DNA of 64,000 bases, taken from positions 1 to 64,000 of the IMG/VR virus record IMGVR_UViG_3300037258_000590. One strand, 5' to 3'. Made by a program: the position numbers and the translations under genes. Below, in pieces: positions 20,295 to 63,806 of this stretch. The first letter of the stretch is position 1. The number at the start of each line of letters is the position of its first letter. A model generated the notes under the pieces. It searched no databases. It worked only from the letters and a program-made list of their open reading frames with translations, and was not told the origin of the DNA.

Positions 20295-20320
20295 CCATCC
20301 GGTTCGCATACAGGAGACCC

Positions 20321-32134: not shown

Positions 32135-32593
32135 CTACCAACTAGAAGCGTTTACTCCGACCGAGCCCGTAGCGAACTGTACCGTGTCGCCGTTAGCCAC
32201 CCCGGTGATGCTGGACGTGAGCGCGCCCTGCAGGCGGCGCAGCGGGGTCCCGGCGGTGTCCCAGATCTCGATTGCGGTGATGGTGGCCCAGTTTCCGGTG
32301 GCGCTCCAGCTGACCGCGTTGGTATTGGTCTGCTGACCGCCAGACGGGGCGCCGCAGAACTGCGAGCCGAGCGAGGAGCCGCCCGCGGTGTACCCGGGGC
32401 AGTTCCCGGACGTCGCCTCGGTGCCATTGGAGGTATTACTGCCCTGGCTGGTCATCAGCCGCAGGTGATACGGCGGCGTGAACGCGAACGCCGAGCCGCC
32501 GGAAGTCCCCGGCGTGACGGTGAATGTGGTGGTAGAGGAGAACATGGCCTGCAGCAGCGCGTTAACCAGGTTCTGGTCCGTCATGTTCGCCAT
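32135..32593 (-). CDS. Small beta-rich virion structural protein (paralogue of 62716)
   Basis: HLRLMT...GTE...GYTAGG...N.NA.SW...TI.AIEIWD...LRR..GAL...I..V.NGDT.QF. Confidence 0.8.
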   Translation of the reverse strand: MANMTDQNLVNALLQAMFSSTTTFTVTPGTSGGSAFAFTPPYHLRLMTSQGSNTSNGTEATSGNCPGYTAGGSSLGSQFCGAPSGGQQTNTNAVSWSATGNWATITAIEIWDTAGTPLRRLQGALTSSITGVANGDTVQFATGSVGVNASSW

Positions 32594-32594
32594 G

Positions 32595-32855
32595 TCAGTT
32601 CAGCCCTGACAGCGCGGCCGGGATGACGAAAGTGATGTTGCCGAGGAAGGTAACCGGCCGGCAGACCGTGCAGCCCGGCGGTTTCGGCCGCGGCGGCCCG
32701 GTCCAGCAGGGCTCGTCGTGCTCGCGCAGGCACGTGTTGGCGTTCTCGCCGTGGTGATGGTCCCCGTCGCAGCACCGGCACCGCAGGGCGGAGTGCGGGT
32801 CCTGGCCTTCCGGGACGTCCAGCATGAGCTGGCACTGGTTGCACCTGACGACCAT
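32595..32855 (-). CDS. Cys/His-rich metal-binding protein (paralogue of 63159)
   Basis: V.C..C...CRCCDGDHHH...AN.C..EH.EPC...CTVCRP. Confidence 0.8.
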   Translation of the reverse strand: MVVRCNQCQLMLDVPEGQDPHSALRCRCCDGDHHHGENANTCLREHDEPCWTGPPRPKPPGCTVCRPVTFLGNITFVIPAALSGLN

Positions 32856-32863
32856 CAGCGCGA

Positions 32864-32899
32864 GGCCTTCCGGGAGAATTCCTCCCGGCTCATCCGCTC
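32864..32899 (-). promoter_or_regulatory. Conserved leader hairpin, copy 1
   Basis: GAGCGGATGAGCCGGGAG-GAATT-CTCCCGGAAGGCC; same element at 63613-63651. Confidence 0.7.
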
Positions 32900-32950
32900 A
32901 GCTCGCGCGCCTGGATGCCTCGGCTACGGTCAAGATTACCCTGCACCCGG

Positions 32951-33442
32951 TCACAAGATGCTGGCTGAGACCAGTGCGGCGTGCATGGTGTTGCACTGAC
33001 TGGCCAGGCTGTTGAACTGGGCGACGAAGTTGTTGTAGTCGCCGGACACCTGGCTGAAATGGAAGTGCGCCTGCAGGTTGTGCTGGTGGTTGTTCAGGCC
33101 GTGCGTGTGCGCGGTGCCGGCACTGGCGGGCCCGGTCGTGTTGTTGTTCGGGTCCCCGGTTGAGTCAGGCTGCGGGCTGCCGGTCTGGGTCTGGGACAAG
33201 TTGCTCGCGGACTGGGAGAAGGGGGCTGTCGTGCCCTGCTGGCTTTGCATCTTGCCGGCCCGGGTCTCCAGGTTGGCGGTGCGCTTCTCGGTGGAGTACG
33301 CCTTGGATGTATTCGCCGCGCTGACCGCGAGGGCCTGGAGCAGCGTGGTGAACAGCTCCAGCGTGCGGGCTTCGCGGCGTAGTGCCCGGGGCAGCAGCCG
33401 GATGGCGGCCAGCGCGATGAGGACCAGGATTACCCTGCGCAT
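32951..33442 (-). CDS. Minor tail-region protein with coiled-coil C-terminus
   Basis: AGGAG SD; in the tail operon. Confidence 0.75.
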   Translation of the reverse strand: MRRVILVLIALAAIRLLPRALRREARTLELFTTLLQALAVSAANTSKAYSTEKRTANLETRAGKMQSQQGTTAPFSQSASNLSQTQTGSPQPDSTGDPNNNTTGPASAGTAHTHGLNNHQHNLQAHFHFSQVSGDYNNFVAQFNSLASQCNTMHAALVSASIL

Positions 33443-51037: not shown

Positions 51038-52906
51038 TCACGTGAAACCCTTGGCGCTTTGCCACGCAGCCAGCGCCCTGGCCACGCGCTCGTTCGCGCC
51101 GACGTGACCTCGTTCCGGCCAGTCTCCTATCACGGCGTTGAGCGCCTGGTCCGCAGGGTCCGCTACCGGGCCCGGGGGTGCCGGCACTGGTGCTGGTGGT
51201 ACCGGAACCGGCACCGGAGCGGGTGCCGGTGCTGGCGGTACCGGAACCGGGAACGGCTTTCCGGTGATCGCCTGGAACTCCGCGGCGAACGCGGTCAGGT
51301 CGACGCCCGCCTGGAATTCGGCGGTATTAAGCTGCTCCTCCCAGACCGGGAACCACAGTTCCTCCGCCTCGTGCGCCCAGAATGCGTCGGTGAAGCTGGT
51401 CTCCTCCGAATTGTGGGAGGCAAGACCCTCAGCAAAGAATGTCCTTGTGTCGGTCTGCAAGGCAATTACTTCCTGCTCGCCAACGAAAACTTTGCTAGTC
51501 AGCTGTACAGTGCGACTAATGTTGAGTCGTCCGAGAAGTTCTGGGTGGAACTTGTCGAGCAGCCGGGCGGGCCGCACAGAACCGAGGAATCGCAGAATCT
51601 CTGGCTTACGATAGATGTGCAGGCGGTGGATGTCCTTCCGCCCGGGGTGGCGGACCCCCTTAGAGGCTGCCCGTGAATCAACGTAATGTTTCGGGTTGAA
51701 TTCAAGTTCTTTCAGGCAGCGCTCTGTCTCGGCGAGCATGGCATTATTCGCCTGCGTAAATCCCAGCGTGGACGCAACAATGCCCTTTGCCTTGCCGCTG
51801 AGGTCCTGCTGCCGGAAATCCCCTTTACCGTCGAACGCGGCAGCGAGATAACCAGCTTCCCGGGATGTTCCGGTATCCCACACGTCAAGCGGCTTAATGA
51901 TCCGGGAAGCCCGCTTGCCAGTAAGCCGCAGATCCTCAGTTGCTAGCCAGTAGACTCTGTTTCCGAGGGTATGAACCAGCCATTTGTGCTCAGCCGAGCA
52001 TCGCACTTTCGTACCGTCGTTAAACTCCAGGTCATAGCAGGGCCTGACGATTTTCTGTGCAGATTCCACGCATGCTCGCCGGTAAAGCCGGCCACCCGAT
52101 CTGCCCCTGTAATTTTCTTCATCAAAGGCAAGAAGCCCGTCGCCTTCCTGAAGATCCCCCGCTGGAATCCAGTGCAAGTTAGATGTGAGTATGCGCATAC
52201 TTGAGTCTACGCACCAGGTGACGAACTTCTCATCACCGGCCATGGCCGGAGAGCCGCCCGCCACCTCGGCACCGTAGCCGCCGCACACGATCGAATGGCC
52301 GCCTTCGACCGGGCTGCCTTTCACGTAGTCCCACGGCCGCCCGGCGTCGAACTGGCTCTCCTGGACTTCCTGCACGTTGATGCCGAGCCACAGCACGCCG
52401 CCAGCAGCGATCGCCGCCTGAACCTCCCTGGCGTTCGCATGGTCGACCGCGGCGAACCCGACGAGCTTGCTGCCATCCGGGCCCGGGTTCTTGACCAGGT
52501 ATTCCAGCAGCGTCTGAATATCCATGCCGTTGTCCGCAGGCGACCCGGGTCCGGTTGTACCGGGGTCCCCAGAGGGATCGAATTGCGGGTTCTGTGTCCG
52601 GTATATTGCTAGTACGTCCGCCCAGCCCGGATAGACCTCATGCCCGCCGATCGCCTTAGAAATGACCCGGCGGATGTTCGCGAAAGTCACGGCAACACAA
52701 TCGCCGCATCCCGGAAAGCCTGGGTGAACACTATCATCGGGGCCGTTTCCGAGCATGAGCCAGCCGCCGTTCATGGCAGTAAGATAATCGACAGCCGCCG
52801 GGACAGCGAGAGCTGAGTGGCGGATGGCCGAGAACCGGATAGCCGGAGCACGCTTGGGCGGACGGCGGCCGTACGTGCCAGCGATGCGGGGAGCGGGCAT
52901 GGTCAT
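51038..52906 (-). CDS. Papain-like (C1/C39-related) cysteine peptidase with an intein and Pro-rich C-terminal extension
   Basis: AGGAG SD, TGATG coupling; LGN...GDCV.V..AN, DNG, GGHSI..GGY, FVTW|. Confidence 0.8.
   Translation of the reverse strand: MTMPAPRIAGTYGRRPPKRAPAIRFSAIRHSALAVPAAVDYLTAMNGGWLMLGNGPDDSVHPGFPGCGDCVAVTFANIRRVISKAIGGHEVYPGWADVLAIYRTQNPQFDPSGDPGTTGPGSPADNGMDIQTLLEYLVKNPGPDGSKLVGFAAVDHANAREVQAAIAAGGVLWLGINVQEVQESQFDAGRPWDYVKGSPVEGGHSIVCGGYGAEVAGGSPAMAGDEKFVTWCVDSSMRILTSNLHWIPAGDLQEGDGLLAFDEENYRGRSGGRLYRRACVESAQKIVRPCYDLEFNDGTKVRCSAEHKWLVHTLGNRVYWLATEDLRLTGKRASRIIKPLDVWDTGTSREAGYLAAAFDGKGDFRQQDLSGKAKGIVASTLGFTQANNAMLAETERCLKELEFNPKHYVDSRAASKGVRHPGRKDIHRLHIYRKPEILRFLGSVRPARLLDKFHPELLGRLNISRTVQLTSKVFVGEQEVIALQTDTRTFFAEGLASHNSEETSFTDAFWAHEAEELWFPVWEEQLNTAEFQAGVDLTAFAAEFQAITGKPFPVPVPPAPAPAPVPVPVPPAPVPAPPGPVADPADQALNAVIGDWPERGHVGANERVARALAAWQSAKGFT
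51410..52213 (-). mobile_element. Intein 3 (268 aa), degenerate LAGLIDADG
   Basis: CVDSSMRILT; block B SAEHKW; GYLAAAFDGKG; ends ASHN followed by Ser+1. Confidence 0.9.
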
Positions 52907-53325
52907 CAGGTAGCTCCTACCGTGAGGTTCAGCCGGGCACCGAAGTACGTGACGCCCGCGTATTCGATCCGGCTGTAGTTTCCTGCCGAGACCGGTTCGC
53001 AGAAATCTACTGCGCCGCCGAGCGTGGGGTCGATCATGATGCCGCCCGGGACAGACTGCCCCTCGCCATCGCCGACGCCGAGATACGTATCCAGGGCGCG
53101 CTGGGTTTTCTCGGCCGGAGCCGCGTCGGAGATGATGATCAAGACGATCAAGCTCAGGTTCACCGCGCCGTCCATGGTGACCCCGTAGGTGATGAGCGGC
53201 TGGCCGGGCAGCACGACCGAGCACGGCGGTGACACCTGGTCCCGGGCCTGAGCGTCGCAGCGCAGCCCGGTCTGCGCGGTGATCTGCGTGGCCAGCGCGT
53301 TGCGGATCGCGGTCAGGTTAGCCAT
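52906..53325 (-). CDS. Tail terminator protein
   Basis: LTAIRNALA..I.......V.PPC.VV.P...LD.Y...G..S....I..D.TLGG. Confidence 0.8.
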   Translation of the reverse strand: MANLTAIRNALATQITAQTGLRCDAQARDQVSPPCSVVLPGQPLITYGVTMDGAVNLSLIVLIIISDAAPAEKTQRALDTYLGVGDGEGQSVPGGIMIDPTLGGAVDFCEPVSAGNYSRIEYAGVTYFGARLNLTVGAT

Positions 53326-54745: not shown

Positions 54746-55187
54746 GCGAGAACTCCGCTATCTCGCGCCCTGGGGCCGGGCCGTCCGTCCCGCTGCCTAG
54801 CCAGGATAACTCCAGTGCGTGCAAGCCGCCGCTCGATACGGCAACCAGGATGCGGACCAGCTCGAAGCACTGGCTGTCGGTGAACTCACCGGTCTCGCGC
54901 CAGGCCCGGTGCCAGCGTGCATGGATCTCCGCCATGGTGCCGACCAGCTCCTCGCCGGCGGCATCGATACCCTGAACCTGGCTGAGCAGCTGTTCCAGGT
55001 CTGGCAGCCCGGAATCCGGCGGCTCGGCATCCGGCCGCGGAGTGTCTGGGCCTGCCTGCGCATCCGGCCGCGGAGTGCCTGGGCCTGCCTGTGCATCCGG
55101 CCGCGGAGTGCCTGGGCCTGCCTGCGCATCCGGCGGGCGCCATGAGCGCGGCTCAGGCTCATACTCAGGCTCAGGGGCGCCATTCAC
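54711..55187 (-). CDS. Hypothetical protein with PDAQAGPGTPR repeats
   Basis: GGAGG SD, GTGA coupling; three 33-bp repeats at 55027-55134. Confidence 0.6.
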   Translation of the reverse strand: MNGAPEPEYEPEPRSWRPPDAQAGPGTPRPDAQAGPGTPRPDAQAGPDTPRPDAEPPDSGLPDLEQLLSQVQGIDAAGEELVGTMAEIHARWHRAWRETGEFTDSQCFELVRILVAVSSGGLHALELSWLGSGTDGPAPGREIAEFSRARAHVTSVPD

Positions 55188-57309: not shown

Positions 57310-60300
57310 TCAGGATACGCCGGGGAAGGTCTGGAACGGCTGGGTCACGCCAGCTACCGCGGTGCCGCGTGCGGTAACTGAAGCCGCTGACACAGAAATC
57401 TTCGTGACACCGTAAGCGGTGCTGAAGCCCTTCACCTGCGGCGGATGAGTCAGGCCCGTCGCGGTCAGCCTCGCGGTGCCGGCCAGTGCTCCGGCGCCTT
57501 GCTGCGCAGCCAGCGTAATCAGGGCTGCGATCCCGCCCAGAGCTGCCGCAGATCGCAGTACAGTGCCGGAGCCGAGTGACCCGGCAGCCCCGAGCACGGC
57601 TCCGGCACCGCCGGCGGCAGCCCCGGCCGCGGTCAGCGCTCCGGCTGCACCGAGCAGGCCGGCGCCCGCGATGCCGCCTCCGGATGCGAGCGAAGCTGTC
57701 GCGCTCAACGAGGTAACCGCCCCGGGCACGGCAGCGCTCGCGAGCGATCCCGCGGCAGCAAGCGCCGACCCGCTGGACGGGATCGCCCCGAGCGATCCTG
57801 CGGCGCCGATCGTCGTAACGACGCCGAGGGCGGCTGCGCTCGCGAGCGATCCCGCACTGCTGAGGATTCCACCCGGGCCCTGAACGGAAACGCTGCCAAG
57901 CGATCCGGCCGCGGCCAAGGCCGCCGGAGCTGCGATCGCGGATACCGCTGCCAGCGAGCCAGCGGCAGCCAGGCCGGAACCGCTGGCCGGATTGGCGCTG
58001 AGCGACCCGGCTGCAGTCAGTGTCGTGATAGCACTGAGCACCGCCGCCGCGGTCAGCGAGCCCGCTGCGGCTAGAGCAGCCGGGGCCGCCACGGCTGAGG
58101 AAGCAGCCAGGAGCCCGGCCGCGGCCAGCACAGCGGGTACCCCGGCGATTACCGCGGGCGCGGCCAGCGAGCCAGCCCCGCTGAGCACCGCGCCGCCCGC
58201 CGGGGTTCCGGTCAGTGACCCGGCCGCGGCCAGGGCGGTAATCGCGCCGAGGACACCGGCGGCCGACAGCGCTCCCGCACCCCCGAGCGAACCAGCTGCG
58301 CCCTGTGTCGCGACGTCACCCAGAGAACCTGTCGCGCTCAGCGTGACAAGCGCTGCCTGGACCGCCATGACGCCCAGTGATGCCGCACCGCCGAGCGTGA
58401 CACCAGCGCTCAGGATAACCGCGGTACTCAGTGATCCGGCTGCCGCCAAGGCTGCAGGCGCGGCCAGAGCCGCTGCGGTACCCAGCGAACCCCCGCCGCT
58501 GAGCACGGAACCCATGACCGAAGCTGCCGCCAGCGATCCCGCGGCCCCGGTCGTTGCCCCCGCGCCCTGGCCGGCGCCGTTGCCCGCAGACCCTGCCGCC
58601 ATCAGGACCGCAGGCGCGCTGAGGACGCCCGCTGTAGCCAGCATCCCCGCCGCGCCGAGCGTGCCGCCCGCACCCTGGATCGTGACCGTACCGAGCGACC
58701 CAGCCGCGCCGAGCGTGCCGCCCGCACCCTGGATCGTGACCGTACCGAGCGACCCAGCCGCGCCGAGCGTAACGCCTGCACCCTGGATCGTGACAGCATT
58801 CAGCGATCCCGTCGCGCTGAGCGTGACAATTGCGTTCTGGGCTGCCGTGGCTGCCAGTGAGCCAGCCGCGCCAAGCGTGACGCCCGCACTCTGGGCTGCT
58901 GCGGCGGCCAGTGATCCGGCAGCCGCCAGTCCTGCGGGCGCGCCGAGCATTTCTGCGCTGGCTAGTGACCCGGCCGCGCCCAGGGCAGTGATCGCGCCGA
59001 GCATTTCTGTGCTGGCTAGTGACCCGGCCGCGGCCAGGGCGGTAACGGCGCCCTGCAGGGCAGCCGGGGCTAGCGATCCAGCGCCGCCGAGCAGGCCTCC
59101 GGCATCCTGGACGGCGGCATTACCAAGCGAAGCTGCCGCACCGAAGGCCGTGCCCGCACCCTGGGTGGCGGCTGTGGCAGCCGATCCGGCGGCGCTGAGA
59201 GCCGCGCCCGCGCTCTGAGTGGCTGCCGTGGCAACCGACCCCCGGGCGGGCAGCGTGGCGATGCCCTGCAGGGCAGTCGGGGCAGCGAGGATGAGCACCC
59301 AGTCCGGGTCGCCCTGGCTGTTGTTTCCCCAGGTGCTGGAGTTGTACGACGAACCGGCCGTGACTGAGGTTTTCGCCCCGGTGATCGGGTCCCCCCGGTA
59401 CGCCTGGTATCCGGAGACCATCTTGGCCTGGTCAATGCCGATGGTCGTGGCGTGCGACAGGTAGATCAGTGCCAGGCTGGAACCCGAGCCGCTGTCCGGG
59501 GTCCGGCTCGCGGTGACGAACGAATCGGTCGTCGCGGCTTCGTACTGGCCGGAACCGCCGCCCGAGACGAACGTGGCCGCCCGCGAGCCCCGGCCGCTGG
59601 TGACCAGCGCCGATGCGGTGTCCGGCATCAGGGCCTGCCAGCCGGGCAGCGATTCGACCAGCGTGCGGATGTTCGCGGCGTTGTTGGCGTAGAACCAGTC
59701 GGTAGAGGAAGCAGCCAGCGCGGTAGCGGCCCATTGCCAGGTTGACTCAGAACCTTGCACGACACCGCGGGCGCCCGACGTGATCGCGTGCCAGGCGTCC
59801 TGCCTGAAAGCCCGGTCAAAAGCTGTAGAACCAGTGCCGCCTGCGTAAAGCGGGCCGCCCTGGTAAAAATACCCGTCGAGCTGGATAACCGGAATAGGAT
59901 CAGGCTCGCCCCAGGCGTCCTCTATACCTAGGTACGTGAGGTTATATGTGTAATTCCCGTTAAAGGCGGCATGGTTATTCCCCCAGTACTGGACCGTGCC
60001 GGTGGTACCCGTACCGAGGTCTTCACGGGAATCAGATTCCGCGTAATTGTGGATGCTGATGATGTGCGTATCGCCGCCGCCGCGCAGCCCGGTCAGCAGC
60101 GATTCATATAGCGTGTCCGTTGCTCCGGGGCTTCCGCCCCCGCTTCCGAGCGTGCCGCCAGAATTGCCGAAATAGTCATTCCCGACCATCCAGATTATGT
60201 TCTTGGTGGTCGCGTACCGGGCAGCGAGAGCGGCGCCGTACTGGCCGAACTGGGTTGCGGTCAGTGAGGTTAGCGCTCCGCCCGTGGCGAAATCTCCGGG

Positions 60301-62640
60301 GCCGTTGTAGCCGATATTGAGCATGGCCGTCATGCCGTTACGTGCGCATGCGGTCAGGAAGTAATCGACCCTGGCCCAGAATGTGCTGTTCAGCCCGATC
60401 GCCGCCGAGCCCGCTACCCCGGCGGTCGTGGCTGCAGTGCCGTTGACCGTGAACGGGAACACGCCGTCCCAGGTGCGGCCGTCCGCGAAAGCGCCGCCGT
60501 TTTCTGAGTTGCCGAGCGGGTCAAGGTAGATGGCGGTGAAACCCTGACCGCCGCGGGCGTTGCAGTACGTGTCGATGTCGGTCTGGTACGTGCCCGCCCA
60601 CCGGCCCGCGTTGGGGATCAGCCCCCACGGGTTGTCGCCCAGCAAGAACCGCGGGCTGCCGTTCTGGTCAGCGAAATACCCGGTGCCGCCGCCAGCGAGG
60701 CCGGTGATGACCAGCGGGCCTTGCGTGGCGGTCAGTGACCCGGCCGCGGTCAGGGTCGCGCCCGCTGCTTGAGCCGCGGCGGTACTCAGCGATGCGGTTC
60801 CGGCGATAGCCGCGCCTGCGCCGGTCACTGCCACGCCCTGGATGGCGATGATGAGGCCCGCGCCTAGAGCGGTGCCCTGCGTTGACCAGTGCCCGGCATC
60901 GGCAAGCGCGGCGGGCCCGGCTGAGGCCTGGCTGTTGGACTGGGTGAACAGGACAGCTGCTCCGGAGGCGGGCAGCTTGCCCTGGCTTGTCCATCCAGAG
61001 CCGGTCTCAGTCCAGGTGAGCGTGGCGCTAGCGCGTTCCTGGGCGAAGACGGAAACCGCGAACTCGCCGTAGGCACCCAGGATTCCGGTGGTGATAGAGA
61101 ACGCGACGGTTCCCGTGCCGCTGCCGGTCTGCTGAACGGCAGAGACGTCAAGCGGAGACGTCAGGTTCGCGCCGGCCAGTTCATACATGAAGCAGGTCAG
61201 TACCGGGGTACCGGAGAGCGTCTGGGTGAACGTGGGCGCGGCATCGCTCCCTGCGGCGGTCTTGACCCAGGCGTCAACTACAGCCTTGGACGTGCCGGAC
61301 GGATTGTTCCCGACGCTGCCTGAAATGAGCCGGGACCAGCCTGTAGCGCTGGTGGAGATATTCGGCGTCTCCGCAGTCGTTGACCCGGCTGAGACGATAG
61401 CCAGCAGCAAGCTGCCTGCGGTCGGGGCCTGGCCGTAGACGGCGGTAAGCGGGCTCGACGTACCGCTGGCTTTGCCGGCACTGCCGACCAGTGTCACCGG
61501 CAGGTGCACAGCCAGGGTAAGCGGCTGGGTAGCCGTGGCCGCCACGCTGTCGGTCACTTCGACGGTGAACGCAGAGCCGCCTTGGCCGGAGGACGGGGTG
61601 CCGGTGACGGCTCCAGTCGATGAGTTTAGCGATGCCCAGGACGGCAGTGCCCCGGACGATACCGACCAGGTGTACGGGGGGGCCCCGCCGGAAGCGGCCA
61701 GCGTCTGGGAGTAGGTGATGCTCGTGGCTGCCGCGGGGAGCGCCGTAGTGGCTACGGCCAGCGCTGACGGAGCCTGGACTTCGAAAGCGATAGCGCCGTA
61801 GAAGTCGTTGGCCTGGGTCCAGACCAGGCTGGTGGTGCCAGCCGAGGAAGGGTTGGTGCCGGCGGCGGTGTTGCCGGCGGCGGAGTTCGTGCCGGCGTCC
61901 TTTTCGTACCGTTTGGTGCCGGTGGTGAACGCGACGCCGCCCGCTCCGCATGTCATGAACGCCAGGCACAGGTTCCCTGACGTAGTGCTGGGCACGGTGA
62001 TCGTCGCGCCGGCGACGAACTGAGCGAAGCCGGTGACGGTGGCGCTTTCTCCGCCAGACCCGGTGACGGACACCGACCCGCCGGTGATCACGTCAAACGT
62101 GGCGCCGGTCACGGTGATCGTGACGGTCTGCGCACCGGCCGCCGGGGCGTCGATCCTGAAGACTTCAACGAACCCGGCGGTGCCGGTCAGCCCGGTGAAC
62201 CCGCTGGACTGCTTGCCCATCGAGGTCATCGCCGTGCCGCCGTACGTGGCGGCTGTGGCATAGGCGGTGTCGGCAGCGCCTCCGTTGTTGCTGACGGCGA
62301 GGCCCGCGTATACCGCTGACGGCGTTCCGGCGGGGGTATGGGTCCACGTCAGCGGACTGGTGGCGCTGGAGGTGCCCGCTGAGGACGGCCCGGCGGCGTC
62401 GAACGCGACGCCTGCGCCGCCGGCGATAAGCCGGACCGGGCGCCCGGAGCGCAAATATCCGATGATCATGCCAGGGTGGCGTTCGCCGCGCCCCCAGGTC
62501 TTCAGGTAACGCCGGGTCAGCACCCAGGGAAGGACAGCAGGCGGCGGTGGCGGCCGGAACCGCCGCGGGCACGCCAAAGCCAGCATGAGGGCCAGCGAGA
62601 AGCGAAGGAGAACCCAGGCGGCTCGCGCCGGAGCAGCCAT
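57310..62640 (-). CDS. 1776-aa fibre-like protein: beta-sandwich domains, He_PIG Ig repeat, DUF4038/GH140 apiosidase-like hydrolase with C-terminal beta domain, long Ala/Gly repeat stalk
   Basis: GGAGG SD; YF....G.P.FLLGD.PW, G..GF.AI, FW.RVD......G, Y...LA.RY....IIW..GND, P.PV......Y, R...W..I.SGA.G...G, W..L.PD, DP.TG, DWVL.L; TTALP......YSQTL.ASGG.PPYTW. Confidence 0.85.
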   Translation of the reverse strand: MAAPARAAWVLLRFSLALMLALACPRRFRPPPPPAVLPWVLTRRYLKTWGRGERHPGMIIGYLRSGRPVRLIAGGAGVAFDAAGPSSAGTSSATSPLTWTHTPAGTPSAVYAGLAVSNNGGAADTAYATAATYGGTAMTSMGKQSSGFTGLTGTAGFVEVFRIDAPAAGAQTVTITVTGATFDVITGGSVSVTGSGGESATVTGFAQFVAGATITVPSTTSGNLCLAFMTCGAGGVAFTTGTKRYEKDAGTNSAAGNTAAGTNPSSAGTTSLVWTQANDFYGAIAFEVQAPSALAVATTALPAAATSITYSQTLAASGGAPPYTWSVSSGALPSWASLNSSTGAVTGTPSSGQGGSAFTVEVTDSVAATATQPLTLAVHLPVTLVGSAGKASGTSSPLTAVYGQAPTAGSLLLAIVSAGSTTAETPNISTSATGWSRLISGSVGNNPSGTSKAVVDAWVKTAAGSDAAPTFTQTLSGTPVLTCFMYELAGANLTSPLDVSAVQQTGSGTGTVAFSITTGILGAYGEFAVSVFAQERASATLTWTETGSGWTSQGKLPASGAAVLFTQSNSQASAGPAALADAGHWSTQGTALGAGLIIAIQGVAVTGAGAAIAGTASLSTAAAQAAGATLTAAGSLTATQGPLVITGLAGGGTGYFADQNGSPRFLLGDNPWGLIPNAGRWAGTYQTDIDTYCNARGGQGFTAIYLDPLGNSENGGAFADGRTWDGVFPFTVNGTAATTAGVAGSAAIGLNSTFWARVDYFLTACARNGMTAMLNIGYNGPGDFATGGALTSLTATQFGQYGAALAARYATTKNIIWMVGNDYFGNSGGTLGSGGGSPGATDTLYESLLTGLRGGGDTHIISIHNYAESDSREDLGTGTTGTVQYWGNNHAAFNGNYTYNLTYLGIEDAWGEPDPIPVIQLDGYFYQGGPLYAGGTGSTAFDRAFRQDAWHAITSGARGVVQGSESTWQWAATALAASSTDWFYANNAANIRTLVESLPGWQALMPDTASALVTSGRGSRAATFVSGGGSGQYEAATTDSFVTASRTPDSGSGSSLALIYLSHATTIGIDQAKMVSGYQAYRGDPITGAKTSVTAGSSYNSSTWGNNSQGDPDWVLILAAPTALQGIATLPARGSVATAATQSAGAALSAAGSAATAATQGAGTAFGAAASLGNAAVQDAGGLLGGAGSLAPAALQGAVTALAAAGSLASTEMLGAITALGAAGSLASAEMLGAPAGLAAAGSLAAAAAQSAGVTLGAAGSLAATAAQNAIVTLSATGSLNAVTIQGAGVTLGAAGSLGTVTIQGAGGTLGAAGSLGTVTIQGAGGTLGAAGMLATAGVLSAPAVLMAAGSAGNGAGQGAGATTGAAGSLAAASVMGSVLSGGGSLGTAAALAAPAALAAAGSLSTAVILSAGVTLGGAASLGVMAVQAALVTLSATGSLGDVATQGAAGSLGGAGALSAAGVLGAITALAAAGSLTGTPAGGAVLSGAGSLAAPAVIAGVPAVLAAAGLLAASSAVAAPAALAAAGSLTAAAVLSAITTLTAAGSLSANPASGSGLAAAGSLAAVSAIAAPAALAAAGSLGSVSVQGPGGILSSAGSLASAAALGVVTTIGAAGSLGAIPSSGSALAAAGSLASAAVPGAVTSLSATASLASGGGIAGAGLLGAAGALTAAGAAAGGAGAVLGAAGSLGSGTVLRSAAALGGIAALITLAAQQGAGALAGTARLTATGLTHPPQVKGFSTAYGVTKISVSAASVTARGTAVAGVTQPFQTFPGVS
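58649..58800 (-). repeat. Near-perfect 54-bp coding repeats (TIQGAGGTLGAAGSLGTV) within a longer degenerate 18-aa repeat region
   Basis: Direct repeats seen in DNA; degenerate copies span about 57470-59280. Confidence 0.8.
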
Positions 62641-62715: not shown

Positions 62716-63153
62716 TCACATACCGCCAGCAGAAATCGCCTCAGCCGCCACCTGGAATGTGTTGCCGTTGGCCACGGTGATCGGCTGTCCGTTCCAGGCG
62801 CCGAACCAGACCCGCAGCGGGGTGGAGTCCACGATCTCCAGTGACACGATGGTCCACGAGGACCCGGAGCCGTTGGTCCAGGAGATGGCGGTGGTGTGCG
62901 GGCACGTGACGTTCGACCCGGCTGAGCTGGCTGCCGACTGGGTGGAGAAGGCGGTGCCGCCTGTGGTGTACCCGGTGCCGGTCAGCTCGGTGCCTGCCGA
63001 GGAGCCGGTACTGGCCGTGGAGAACAGCTTCAGCTTCATCGCCGAGCCGCCGAGAGCGGCGAATGAGGTGCCAGGCACGCCCGAGGCGCCGGTCGGCAGG
63101 GTGGCGTTGAGGATCTTGGTCGACATGGCCGCATCCCAGGCTGTCTGCGCCAT
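62716..63153 (-). CDS. Small beta-rich virion structural protein (paralogue of 32135)
   Basis: KLKLF...GTEL...GYT.GG...AISW...TIV.LEI.D...LR.W.GA....I.V.NG.T.Q. Confidence 0.8.
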   Translation of the reverse strand: MAQTAWDAAMSTKILNATLPTGASGVPGTSFAALGGSAMKLKLFSTASTGSSAGTELTGTGYTTGGTAFSTQSAASSAGSNVTCPHTTAISWTNGSGSSWTIVSLEIVDSTPLRVWFGAWNGQPITVANGNTFQVAAEAISAGGM

Positions 63154-63158
63154 CTAGA

Positions 63159-63605
63159 TCACGCCCCCGCCGGCTGGATCACGGTACTGCCGCGCATGAC
63201 GGTGATGATCAGCGGCCTGCAGACGGTGCAGTTCCTGACGCCCTTGGCGCAGTGCGCACCTGGGCAGTCCGGCACCGTCGCGCCGGAGAACAGCGGGTGG
63301 GTGCCGGGTTCGAACAGCGGGTGATGCGCGTCGGCGGTGGCGCCCTGCCAGGTCCGGCAGCTGCCCGGTTCCGGGCACGGCTCGTCATCATGCGCGCCGG
63401 AGCAGGCGTTCGCCGCCGCGGCGTGATCATGGTCCTGGTGGCAGCAGCCGGGGTTCGTGCTGGCCGGATTGCAGGTGATGGCGGCGTCGATGCCAGCATG
63501 CGAGCAGCCGTCTTGGTGCTGGCCCGCGACGGCGAGGTAATCCGGCGGGCATGTGCACTCCAGGAATGCCTGGGTCATGCAGCCGGCACACTGAACGTGA
63601 AGCAC
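63159..63605 (-). CDS. Cys/His-rich metal-binding protein (paralogue of 32595)
   Basis: VQC..C...CCHQDHDH...ANAC...H.EPC...CTVCRP. Confidence 0.8.
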   Translation of the reverse strand: MLHVQCAGCMTQAFLECTCPPDYLAVAGQHQDGCSHAGIDAAITCNPASTNPGCCHQDHDHAAAANACSGAHDDEPCPEPGSCRTWQGATADAHHPLFEPGTHPLFSGATVPDCPGAHCAKGVRNCTVCRPLIITVMRGSTVIQPAGA

Positions 63606-63612
63606 GAGAGCG

Positions 63613-63651
63613 GGCCTTCCGGGGGGTGGATACCTCCCGGCTCACCCGCTC
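63613..63651 (-). promoter_or_regulatory. Conserved leader hairpin, copy 2
   Basis: GAGCGGGTGAGCCGGGAGG-TATCCA-CCCCCCGGAAGGCC. Confidence 0.7.
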
Positions 63652-63806
63652 GACATGCGCCAGGGTGCCTCGGCTAGCACCAGGTTACCGCAGGCCGGGC
63701 ACGGACGTCAGGCCACGCCAGCGATAGATCCCGGGCAGTGGGCGGGACCATCTCCGGTTCCGTCCGTGCCCGGTAAGGCAGCTACGTCCTGGCTGCGGCC
63801 AGGCTA

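What the first reader, a model, noticed from the sequence alone, without database searches (positions are those of the whole stretch)
32864..32899. Same hairpin-forming leader upstream of both Cys/His-rich genes: candidate new cis-regulatory RNA
Seen (minus strand): GAGCGGATGAGCCGGGAG-GAATT-CTCCCGG-AAGGCC at 32864-32899 and GAGCGGGTGAGCCGGGAGG-TATCCA-CCCCCCGG-AAGGCC at 63613-63651. Runs of 11 and 12 nt are identical, while the loop differs in length and sequence and the downstream proteins have diverged heavily. The likely SD (GGAAGG, 9-10 nt before the start) begins inside the 3' arm of the stem. Non-coding sequence conserved more than the coding paralogues implies function. Inference: a translational operator or switch, possibly bound by the metal-rich protein itself.
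Basis: partly seen in the sequence, partly recalled or inferred. Interest (0 to 1): 0.72.

Follow-up and report, generated by a model that had tools for sequence, protein, structure and literature searches.

The report
Structured leader before phage fibre-accessory genes
Two copies of a conserved, hairpin-forming stretch of about 95 bases sit in front of two diverged tail-fibre accessory gene pairs of an uncultured 210-kb soil phage; it most likely acts as an RNA leader that buries the ribosome-binding site and so limits or controls how much of these proteins is made.

Summary
The window is the first 64 kb of a complete 210-kb, 67.6% GC phage with an actinophage-like terminase.

- **Extent and copies.** Both copies lie on the minus strand at the stated coordinates. 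Similarity extends upstream to a -10-like TAAYCT box. These are the only two copies in the genome.
- **Context.** Each copy precedes a Cys/His-rich small gene that abuts a Gp80-like fibre gene.
- **Relatives.** At least 14 further distinct sequence variants occur in soil phage and metagenome contigs. Two of them precede a different gene. Many Cys/His homologues have no leader.
- **Conservation.** The conserved blocks are 92-95% identical, while third codon positions next door are 58% identical.
- **Structure.** An outer helix (P1) with compensatory changes encloses an invariant inner hairpin (P2) with a variable loop. The Shine-Dalgarno sequence GGAAGG lies between them.
- **Cost of opening.** Opening the ribosome site costs 25.1 and 19.8 kcal/mol, against a genome mean of 12.2.
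- **Databases.** There is no Rfam match and no cultured relative.

Best reading: a new RNA leader motif that occludes the ribosome-binding site. Binding by the Cys/His protein is not supported. Caveats: covariation is modest, most folding z-scores are ordinary, and no RNA data exist.

The parts
32933..32938 (-). Copy 1: -10-like hexamer TAATCT, 7 nt upstream of the conserved AGCC
   Evidence: Read. A TANNCT box lies 6-10 nt before AGCC in all 16 full leaders extracted. Its promoter role is inferred. The E. coli-type two-hexamer scan found nothing.
32856..32925 (-). Copy 1: leader from the conserved AGCC to the base before the ATG (70 nt)
   Evidence: The covariance model R1 scores its 3' part (32852-32903) at 39.7 bits, E 1e-6.
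32870..32888 (-). Copy 1: inner hairpin P2, CCGGGAG / loop GAATT / CTCCCGG (7 perfect pairs)
32866..32871 (-). Copy 1: Shine-Dalgarno GGAAGG. Its first two G lie in the P2 3' arm. It ends 10 nt before the ATG at 32853-32855.
   Evidence: The block is conserved in all homologues.
32858..32867 (-). Copy 1: 3' strand of the closing helix (spacer between the Shine-Dalgarno sequence and the start). It can pair either with 32900-32908 or with the 5' end at 32917-32925, a different register from the other family members.
   Evidence: The alternative minimum-energy folds.
32595..32855 (-). Cys/His-rich small gene, short paralogue (86 aa, P0001)
32135..32593 (-). Gp80-like fibre protein gene (152 aa), starting 1 nt after the stop of the Cys/His gene
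   Evidence: Pfam PF23140, E 9e-10. It is a paralogue of 62716-63153.
63682..63687 (-). Copy 2: -10-like hexamer TAACCT preceded by TGCGG, 6 nt upstream of AGCC
   Evidence: The promoter role is inferred (one search found no two-hexamer promoter).
63606..63675 (-). Copy 2: leader from AGCC to the base before the GTG start (70 nt)
   Evidence: minimum free energy -40.5 kcal/mol, z -3.3. R1 scores 48.8 bits, E 7e-9.
63644..63651 (-). Copy 2: outer helix P1, 5' strand GAGCGGGT
63608..63615 (-). Copy 2: outer helix P1, 3' strand GCCCGCTC, which fills the spacer between the Shine-Dalgarno sequence and the start
63619..63640 (-). Copy 2: inner hairpin P2 (core CCGGG/CCCGG, one A.C mismatch, loop ATCC)
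63615..63620 (-). Copy 2: Shine-Dalgarno GGAAGG, ending 9 nt before the GTG at 63603-63605
63159..63605 (-). Cys/His-rich gene, full-length form (148 aa, P0002)
   Evidence: The family has 251 members, none named and none with a Pfam domain. The AlphaFold2 model has pLDDT 88 and no fold match.
62716..63153 (-). Gp80-like fibre protein gene (145 aa), starting 5 nt after the stop of the Cys/His gene
   Evidence: Complex prediction with the Cys/His protein gives weak support: 0.51 against a best control of 0.00.
63695..63785 (-). Copy 2 only: conserved structured region upstream of the -10-like box. It holds the GTAGCTGCC block, a 13-bp long-range helix (63761-63773 with 63695-63707), and an enclosed hairpin (63727-63749) with the conserved loop CCACUGCC.
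   Evidence: 98.1% of cells paired against 19-52% when slid. The whole 207-nt spacer folds with z -4.3.

Best explanation
The element is a cis-acting RNA leader of about 70-76 nt. It heads a small tail-fibre accessory cassette: a Cys/His-rich protein gene followed directly by a Gp80-like fibre gene.

Proposed mechanism, step by step:
1. Transcription probably starts about 7 nt after a conserved TGnGnTAAYCT box, at the conserved AGCC (inferred).
2. The 3' two-thirds of the leader folds into a two-tier hairpin. An outer helix P1 of 7-9 pairs is followed by an internal loop (UGAG opposite AAGG). An inner hairpin P2 has an invariant CCGGG/CCCGG core and a loop free to vary in length and sequence.
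3. The Shine-Dalgarno GGAAGG straddles the P2 3' arm, the internal loop and the P1 3' arm. The P1 3' strand is the spacer up to the start codon. The whole ribosome-binding site is therefore locked in the structure (shown by sequence and by computed folds).
4. This throttles or gates translation initiation of the first gene (inferred).
5. The second gene starts 1-5 nt after the first gene's stop in this phage and its relatives. It is probably translationally coupled, so the leader would set the output of the pair (inferred).
6. UGAG and both P2 arms are invariant although they are unpaired or free to covary. This suggests that an unidentified trans-acting factor reads the structure (inferred).
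For: There are exactly two copies in the 210-kb genome, in the same orientation as the genes. Homologous leaders occur in at least 14 further distinct sequence variants from other contigs. Most of these were recovered independently through the protein, not through the leader sequence.

Among ten loci retrieved by protein, the leader blocks are 95% and 92% identical. The adjacent codons are 82% identical at positions 1+2 and 58% at position 3.

Structure counts on the model-fitted alignment give 83.5% of cells paired, against 38-51% when the partner is slid. Five P1 pairs show changes on both sides, for example G-C to C-G in L013/L035 and G-C to A-U in L059/L111. The covariation score is 0.125 against 0.077 in shuffles, 0 of 500 reaching it.

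The distance between the two conserved blocks varies (25-32 nt span). This fits a hairpin and does not fit a rigid two-half-site DNA operator. Where the usual P1 5' strand does not fit (copy 1, L053), another upstream segment pairs with the same 3' spacer.

The energy to open -18..+6 is 25.1 kcal/mol (rank 3 of 224 genes) for copy 2 and 19.8 (rank 18) for copy 1. The genome mean is 12.2, sd 4.8. The tight junction between the two genes is conserved.
Against: Folding z-scores are unremarkable for most leaders (-1.2 to +0.6). Only copy 2, L013 and L035 stand out, because GC-rich sequence folds well anyway. P2 shows no covariation at all; its core is invariant. The counted alignment was fitted to the structure. 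There are only about 17 sequences of limited depth, and some counted double changes come from poorly aligned rows (L035, L053). Counts of G.U against A.C do not decide the strand (8 against 11). The promoter is inferred from a -10-like box alone, and the two-hexamer scan found none. No RNA sequencing run was listed, so neither the 5' end nor expression could be checked. Cys/His genes in other phages do without the leader, so it is not essential to that gene.
Confidence: 0.5

Rival explanations
1. The element is mainly a transcription-level DNA element. On this view the conserved unit is a promoter with its initial transcribed region, or the binding site of a phage transcription regulator, and the hairpin is incidental.
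For: A TANNCT box preceded by TGnGn lies at a fixed 6-10 nt from the AGCC block in all copies. By my own knowledge this resembles the extended -10 of actinobacterial sigma-A promoters. Copy 1 retains exactly the unit that starts at this box. The P2 arms and UGAG are invariant rather than covarying, as expected for sequence-specific recognition.
Against: The spacing between the two conserved blocks varies by up to 7 nt. P1 shows compensatory changes and register shifts that keep a helix. The conserved 3' block is the Shine-Dalgarno sequence itself. There are only two copies in 210 kb, so it is not a general promoter class. No two-hexamer promoter was detected.
Confidence: 0.15
2. The element is an RNA processing or stability element. 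On this view the two-tier hairpin is an RNase III-type cleavage site or a protective structure that defines and stabilises the cassette's mRNA within a long late transcript.
For: The irregular hairpin of about 16-20 pairs with a near-symmetric internal loop resembles phage T7 RNase III sites (my own knowledge). It lies between genes of a roughly 30-kb same-strand structural cluster. A small 5'-proximal hairpin is predicted in most leaders. Copy 2 is preceded by a second well-supported RNA structure.
Against: Cleavage in the internal loop would cut through the Shine-Dalgarno sequence and separate it from the start codon. No cleavage can be tested here. No RNA data are available.
Confidence: 0.13
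3. One reading: an autoregulatory operator bound by the Cys/His-rich, presumably zinc-binding protein encoded just downstream. The analogue is phage Mu Com, a small zinc protein that opens a hairpin masking the mom ribosome site.
For: A Cys/His-rich small protein is encoded directly behind the leader in most loci. The invariant unpaired bases suggest a trans-acting reader. The Mu precedent is from my own knowledge.
Against: L013 and L035 carry the leader before an unrelated 227-aa gene, and their fragments encode no Cys/His protein. At least eight loci have the Cys/His gene without the leader. Complex prediction gives weak support (0.51 against a best control of 0.00) for the protein's conserved C-terminal strand docking on the Gp80-like fibre protein. 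The DHDH motif resembles the HxH metal sites of phage fibres (my own knowledge). The model has no fold match to known RNA-binding proteins.
Confidence: 0.07
4. The element is a promoter-proximal RNA that modifies RNA polymerase for read-through of terminators, like the put sites of phage HK022 or a nut site.
For: There are two copies per genome, each apparently just downstream of a candidate promoter. Each heads genes that include very long reading frames, such as the 1776-aa protein after copy 2. Like putL and putR (my own knowledge), the copies are stem-loop RNAs conserved in sequence rather than by covariation.
Against: Copy 1 sits near the end of the structural cluster. The conserved 3' block coincides with the ribosome site, which the translational model explains directly.
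Confidence: 0.05
5. The element has no function. On this view the similarity is a remnant of a recent duplication, gene conversion or a recombination joint between fibre cassettes.
For: The leader lies at a mosaic joint. L035 shares the upstream gene with copy 2-type loci but has a different downstream gene. The copy 1 cassette is present only in this phage among the large relatives searched.
Against: The blocks are 92-95% identical across loci whose adjacent third codon positions are 58% identical and whose loops are unrelated. Compensatory changes occur in P1. The leader length from AGCC to the start is constant at about 68-78 nt in 15 of 16 leaders, the exception being L067 at 92 nt.
Confidence: 0.05

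Closest known systems
Start-associated sequences and extended SAS (SAS/ESAS) of Cluster K mycobacteriophages (PMC3203893; PMC12699233)
   Same: Both are conserved non-coding repeats of actinobacteriophages placed at translation starts and containing the ribosome-binding site. [quoted passage not shown] The same holds here: the 5' arm is invariant and the loop is 4-11 nt. Function is unknown in both.
   Different: The sequence is different (SAS is GGGATAGGAGCCC). SAS occur 11-19 times per genome in non-structural genes. Here there are two copies, before tail-fibre accessory genes. Here the Shine-Dalgarno sequence follows the inverted repeat's 3' arm, and a second, covarying outer helix closes over it. 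This phage has a separate SAS-like motif, ACAGGAGA, at other genes.
Hairpins that mask the ribosome site, and translational operators of phages (Mu com-mom translation inhibition structure; T4 gene 32 and regA operators; MS2 replicase operator). Recalled from my own knowledge.
   Same: A stable stem-loop in the 5' leader contains the Shine-Dalgarno sequence and abuts the start codon, so initiation requires opening it. Conserved unpaired bases are candidate recognition points.
   Different: No binding protein has been identified. The leader occurs without the neighbouring Cys/His gene and the gene without the leader. No sequence or Rfam relation exists.
RNase III processing sites of phage T7 (my own knowledge)
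   Same: An intergenic, irregular hairpin of two helices separated by an internal loop, recurring within a long same-strand gene cluster.
   Different: The internal loop here carries the Shine-Dalgarno sequence, so cleavage there would inactivate rather than release the downstream message. No cleavage evidence exists.

Membership tests
Any Rfam 15 family (including riboswitches for metals, RNA thermometers and phage RNAs) | A match to a curated covariance model | tested here: not met
   There is no hit at gathering score in the 64-kb window. No hit with E up to 5 overlaps either leader in L136 or L137.
SAS/ESAS of Cluster K mycobacteriophages | A 13-bp consensus GGGATAGGAGCCC immediately upstream of the start codon | tested here: not met
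   The leader sequence read does not contain it. The conserved block is CCCGGAAGGCC. The definition is from PMC3203893.
SAS/ESAS of Cluster K mycobacteriophages | Many copies (11-19) per genome, in the non-structural arm | tested here: not met
   There are two copies in 210 kb, both in the structural cluster.
SAS/ESAS of Cluster K mycobacteriophages | Imperfect inverted repeats with a variable 4-13 bp spacer just upstream of the start signal | tested here: met
   The P2 arms CCGGGAG / CTCCCGG are separated by loops of 4-11 nt. This is architecture only, not homology.
Translational operator that masks the ribosome site | The Shine-Dalgarno sequence and spacer are base-paired in a conserved leader structure | tested here: met
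   Computed folds place it so in 16 leaders. Opening energy ranks 3 and 18 of 224 genes. This rests on prediction, not probing.
Translational operator that masks the ribosome site | Stem mutations change translation; a trans-acting factor binds | not testable with these tools
   This needs reporter fusions and binding assays.
Intrinsic (rho-independent) terminator | A GC-rich hairpin followed by a run of T | tested here: not met
   No terminator-like site lies at either leader. The bases after the hairpin are the start codon and coding sequence.
Sigma-70-type promoter | -35 and -10 hexamers at 16-18 nt spacing | tested here: inconclusive
   The consensus scan found none. A conserved -10-like TANNCT with TGnGn is present. 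Actinobacterial promoters often lack a -35 (my own knowledge).
Dimeric DNA operator (inverted-repeat binding site) | Fixed spacing between the half-sites | tested here: not met
   The span from TGAGCC to GGAAGG varies from 25 to 32 nt among homologues.

The most novel reading that the evidence does not exclude
The leader is the expression platform of a larger regulated RNA system specific to tail-fibre cassettes of a lineage of uncultured soil jumbo actinophages. On this reading a trans-acting phage factor reads the invariant UGAG/CCGGGAGG face of the hairpin to switch on translation of receptor-binding accessory proteins late in infection. That factor could be the novel-fold Cys/His metal protein acting like Mu Com, or a factor that recognises the conserved CCACUGCC loop of the upstream domain. 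This would be a new protein-RNA translational switch class.
Probability: 0.12. Interest if true: 0.65.

Novelty: new variant of a known kind. Interest (0 to 1): 0.45.

Why it matters
If it is confirmed, this adds a new structured RNA leader family to the few cis-regulatory RNAs known from actinobacteriophages, and it comes from a lineage known only from soil metagenomes. It would show that large phages tune or gate the synthesis of receptor-binding accessory proteins at the level of translation initiation. It would also give a second case to compare with the still unexplained SAS/ESAS repeats of mycobacteriophages. In practice, the motif marks the start of swappable fibre cassettes in metagenomic contigs. 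It is compact enough for direct mutational tests. It is not a surprise in kind, since hairpins that mask ribosome sites are common.

Tried and rejected
- **Rfam:** gathering-score and permissive searches found nothing at the leaders.
- **Cultured relatives:** tblastn of the Cys/His protein and blastn of the spacer against 50,697 phage records gave no match.
- **Prophage or host copies:** the exact-pattern scan of GTDB genomes gave 16 hits, all chance matches inside unrelated sequence.
- **More copies:** weak covariance-model hits in this genome and in five related records proved to be coding sequence or unrelated hairpins.
- **RNA evidence:** only soil DNA runs hold the region, and no RNA run was listed.
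- **Thermodynamic test:** z-scores are not convincing for most leaders.
- **Strand from wobble pairs:** not decisive, 8 G.U against 11 A.C.
- **Alternative anti-P1 hairpin (GCUCA with UGAGC):** present in some leaders only. I inspected this by eye on the sequences and rejected it.
- **Upstream mini-ORF ending at the UGA of GGGUGAGCC:** present in copy 2 and L007 but absent in copy 1. Rejected.
- **K-turn in the internal loop:** the bases do not fit the consensus. Rejected from memory of the motif, not by a tool.
- **Sigma-54 promoter at TGGCAC:** the spacing is off by one and the likely host phylum lacks sigma-54 (my own knowledge). Rejected.
- **Site-specific recombination between the copies:** they are direct repeats 30.7 kb apart that flank essential structural genes. 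Rejected.
- **Fold of the Cys/His protein:** a confident model but no match in PDB or BFVD.
- **Complex of the Cys/His protein with its Gp80-like neighbour:** only weak support, score 0.51 against a best control of 0.00. The mark was reached by 58 of 80 solved complexes and 2 of 110 mismatched pairs, and scores at or under 0.60 are more often wrong than right unless the pairing was likely beforehand.

Full report
**What the window is.** The window is bases 1-64000 of a 210,383-bp virus record with direct terminal repeats, rated complete, at 67.6% GC. A 728-aa protein at 51038-53224 is a terminase large subunit. It is 31-32% identical to those of 155-kb mycobacteriophages and Gordonia phages. 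The host is therefore probably an actinobacterium, which is an inference. The DNA occurs in soil metagenome runs. From about 63.6 kb down to about 32 kb nearly all long reading frames are on the minus strand and are virion genes. They include a head-tail adaptor, glycine-rich fibre proteins of 717 and 1067 aa, a 2031-aa protein with a transglycosylase-like part, and a 1776-aa protein with a glycosidase domain.

**Checking the observation.** On the minus strand both quoted strings are present at exactly the stated coordinates. The identical runs are TGAGCCGGGAGG and CCCGGAAGGCC. The loops differ. GGAAGG ends 10 and 9 nt before the ATG at 32855 and the GTG at 63605. A search of the whole genome with copy 1 finds only copy 2 (63 nt, 77% identity, E 5.9e-8). 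Degenerate patterns and a covariance model find no third copy. The two downstream proteins share only two short patches.

It is also incomplete. The alignment continues upstream through AGCC-GA-GGCA to a TAAYCT box. Each copy precedes not one but two paralogous genes. The first is a Cys/His-rich small protein. The second is a protein of the Pfam family Gp80 (podophage GP4 fibre I), which starts 1 nt and 5 nt after the first gene's stop.

**Relatives.**
- DNA pattern scans of IMG/VR found true homologues among chance hits.
- Searches starting from the Cys/His protein, which are blind to the leader, recovered the same loci and more.
- Besides the two window copies I have 14 further distinct leader sequences: L007, L063, L057, L050, L061, L056, L058, L059, L067, L111, L053, L153, L157 and L159.
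- L013 and L035 carry the same leader before an unrelated 227-aa gene (phrog_23653, function unknown), which in L035 is followed by a minor tail protein gene.
- Cys/His homologues in at least eight other loci lie behind a short ordinary spacer with a GAGG-type ribosome site and no leader. These are L054/55/155, L070-72, L160/161, L164, L060 and L073-77.
- Each of five related records has one copy. Only this phage has the second Cys/His cassette.
- No GTDB genome and no cultured phage carries the element.

**Conservation.** I compared ten loci that are retrievable by protein.

| Region compared | Mean pairwise identity |
|---|---|
| 18-nt 5' block of the leader | 95% |
| 10-nt 3' block of the leader | 92% |
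| First 21 codons after the start codon, positions 1+2 | 82% |
| Same codons, position 3 | 58% |

The hairpin loops between the blocks are unrelated in sequence and length. This is purifying selection, not recent common descent. The length from AGCC to the start codon stays within 68-78 nt in 15 of 16 leaders.

**Structure.** Single-sequence folds give the same topology in nearly all members.
- A small 5'-proximal hairpin comes first.
- An outer helix P1 follows. It is typically GAGCGGG with CCCGCTC and can extend to nine pairs.
- Next is an internal loop, UGAG opposite AAGG.
- An inner hairpin P2 has a CCGGG/CCCGG core.

GGAAGG spans the P2 3' arm, the loop and P1. The P1 3' strand is the spacer before the start codon.

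I built a covariance model from seven consistently aligned members and realigned 17 distinct sequences to it. On that alignment 83.5% of cells are paired, against 38-51% with the partner slid by 1-3 columns. Five P1 pairs show changes on both sides. The covariation score is 0.125 against 0.077 in shuffles, with 0 of 500 shuffles reaching it (similar).

The clear events are:
- G-C to C-G at the outer end of the helix in L013/L035;
- G-C to A-U in L059 and L111, with the same A in L153 pairing to U only across a one-base bulge;
- two G.U pairs in L057.

Copy 1 and L053 do not use the usual 5' strand. In each, a different upstream segment pairs with the same 3' spacer. The helix is kept while its sequence solution differs.

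**Limits of the structural evidence.**
- P2 never covaries.
- The counted alignment was fitted to the structure, and a few rows (L035, L053) are poorly aligned.
- Wobble counts do not decide the strand.
- Folding z-scores are ordinary for most members.

**Functional indicators.** Over 224 crude gene calls of the genome, the free energy needed to keep -18..+6 unpaired averages 12.2 kcal/mol (sd 4.8). It is 25.1 for the copy 2 gene (rank 3) and 19.8 for the copy 1 gene (rank 18). The usual ribosome site in this phage is AGGAG (67 of 224 genes). GGAAGG is a weaker and rarer type. The varying distance between the two conserved blocks argues against a rigid DNA operator. There is no T-run, so this is not an intrinsic terminator.

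A TANNCT box preceded by TGnGn lies 6-10 nt before AGCC in every member. It marks exactly where copy 1 begins to resemble copy 2. I read it as the -10 element of a promoter, so that the leader would be the 5' end of the cassette's mRNA. This is inference only, because no RNA run could be found.

**The Cys/His protein.** The family has 251 members at E up to 0.001. None is named and none has a Pfam domain. Fourteen positions are invariant, ten of them Cys and three His, and there is a DHDH motif. AlphaFold2 gives a confident model (pLDDT 88) with little regular secondary structure. The model has no match in PDB or BFVD.

Complex prediction with the Gp80-like neighbour gives weak support: 0.51 against a best control of 0.00. 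The mark was reached by 58 of 80 solved complexes and 2 of 110 mismatched pairs, and passes at or under 0.60 are weak. The interface is formed by the C-terminal strand, residues 130-147, which is the part best conserved between the two paralogues.

Three things point to a virion or assembly role rather than a regulator of its own leader: the fibre context, the loci with leader but no Cys/His gene, and the loci with the gene but no leader.

**Upstream domain of copy 2.** In copy 2-type loci the spacer is about 200 nt. It carries further conserved blocks. RNAalifold on an unfitted alignment of 13 sequences predicts two features. One is a 13-pair long-range helix, CCGGGCACGGACG with CGTCCGTGCCCGG. 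The other is an enclosed hairpin with the conserved loop CCACUGCC, whose two outer pairs covary. 98.1% of cells are paired against 19-52% when slid, and G.U pairs outnumber A.C. The full 207-nt spacer folds with z -4.3. Copy 1 lacks this domain. In L163 only its first half is present, and there its 3' strand covers an AGGAGG ribosome site. Whether the domain ends the upstream transcript or belongs to the same RNA as the leader is open.

**Comparison with known systems.** The nearest described phenomenon is the SAS/ESAS repeats of Cluster K mycobacteriophages. These are conserved start-associated sequences, half of them preceded by imperfect inverted repeats with a 4-13 bp spacer, and their function is unknown (PMC3203893; PMC12699233). 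The architecture is similar. The sequence, copy number, gene class and the covarying outer helix are not. In mechanism the element looks like the ribosome-site-masking leaders and operators of Mu, T4 and MS2 (my own knowledge). No Rfam family matches.

**Verdict.** This is a real, selected, hairpin-forming leader that defines a new RNA motif of a familiar kind. The translational-occlusion mechanism is the best-supported reading (about 0.5). Binding by the Cys/His protein is unlikely.

Noticed in passing
window 63695-63785 (minus strand); homologues listed: A second conserved structured RNA domain lies upstream of copy 2. It has a 13-bp long-range helix enclosing a hairpin with the invariant loop CCACUGCC and covarying closing pairs, and it is preceded by an invariant GTAGCTGCC block. 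Copy 1 lacks it.
   Followed up: partly
window 63788-63803 (minus strand): A small hairpin, CCTGGC-CGCA-GCCAGG, sits immediately after the stop codon of the upstream 230-aa gene. L007 has a similar hairpin in the same position with a different loop.
   Followed up: no
own genome outside the window, mostly 147-190 kb on the plus strand; one copy in the window at 20310 (+): The 8-mer ACAGGAGA occurs 27 times against roughly 4 expected. About 23 of the copies lie a few bases before a start codon. This is a start-associated motif of another gene class, reminiscent of the SAS of Cluster K mycobacteriophages.
   Followed up: partly
locus L163:1140-1200: In this relative the Cys/His gene is preceded only by the first half of the upstream domain. 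The 3' strand of that half (TGCCCAGGAGGCAG) pairs with the GTAGCTGCC-side strand and covers an AGGAGG ribosome site. It is a different way of masking the same gene's start.
   Followed up: no
window 63159-63605 and 32595-32855 (minus strand): The Cys/His-rich protein family has 251 metagenomic members and no Pfam domain. It has 14 invariant positions, ten Cys and three His among them, and a DHDH motif. Its confident AlphaFold2 model has no fold match in PDB or BFVD, so it may be a new metal-binding fold.
   Followed up: partly
window 32951-33442 (minus strand): The 163-aa protein just upstream of copy 1 ends with several H-x-H motifs (HTH, HQH, HFH), as in the metal-binding tips of phage tail fibres (my own knowledge). 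It has no Pfam or PHROG hit.
   Followed up: no
window 55027-55134: There are three tandem copies of a 33-nt unit, 95-98% identical (family D9).
   Followed up: no
window 57600-59300 (inside the 1776-aa gene at 57310-62640, minus strand): There is a long array of diverged 54-nt (18-residue) repeats in a protein that also has an apiosidase-like/GH5 glycosidase domain and an Ig-like domain. It is probably a tail spike.
   Followed up: no
locus L136:2864-2978 (own genome about 64965-65079, just outside the window): A long hairpin gives weak, sub-threshold matches to microRNA precursor models on both strands. It is probably just a long inverted repeat.
   Followed up: no
locus L013 (whole contig, 13.6 kb): IMG/VR classes this leader-bearing contig as a provirus. 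Its flanks might reveal the host of this phage group.
   Followed up: no
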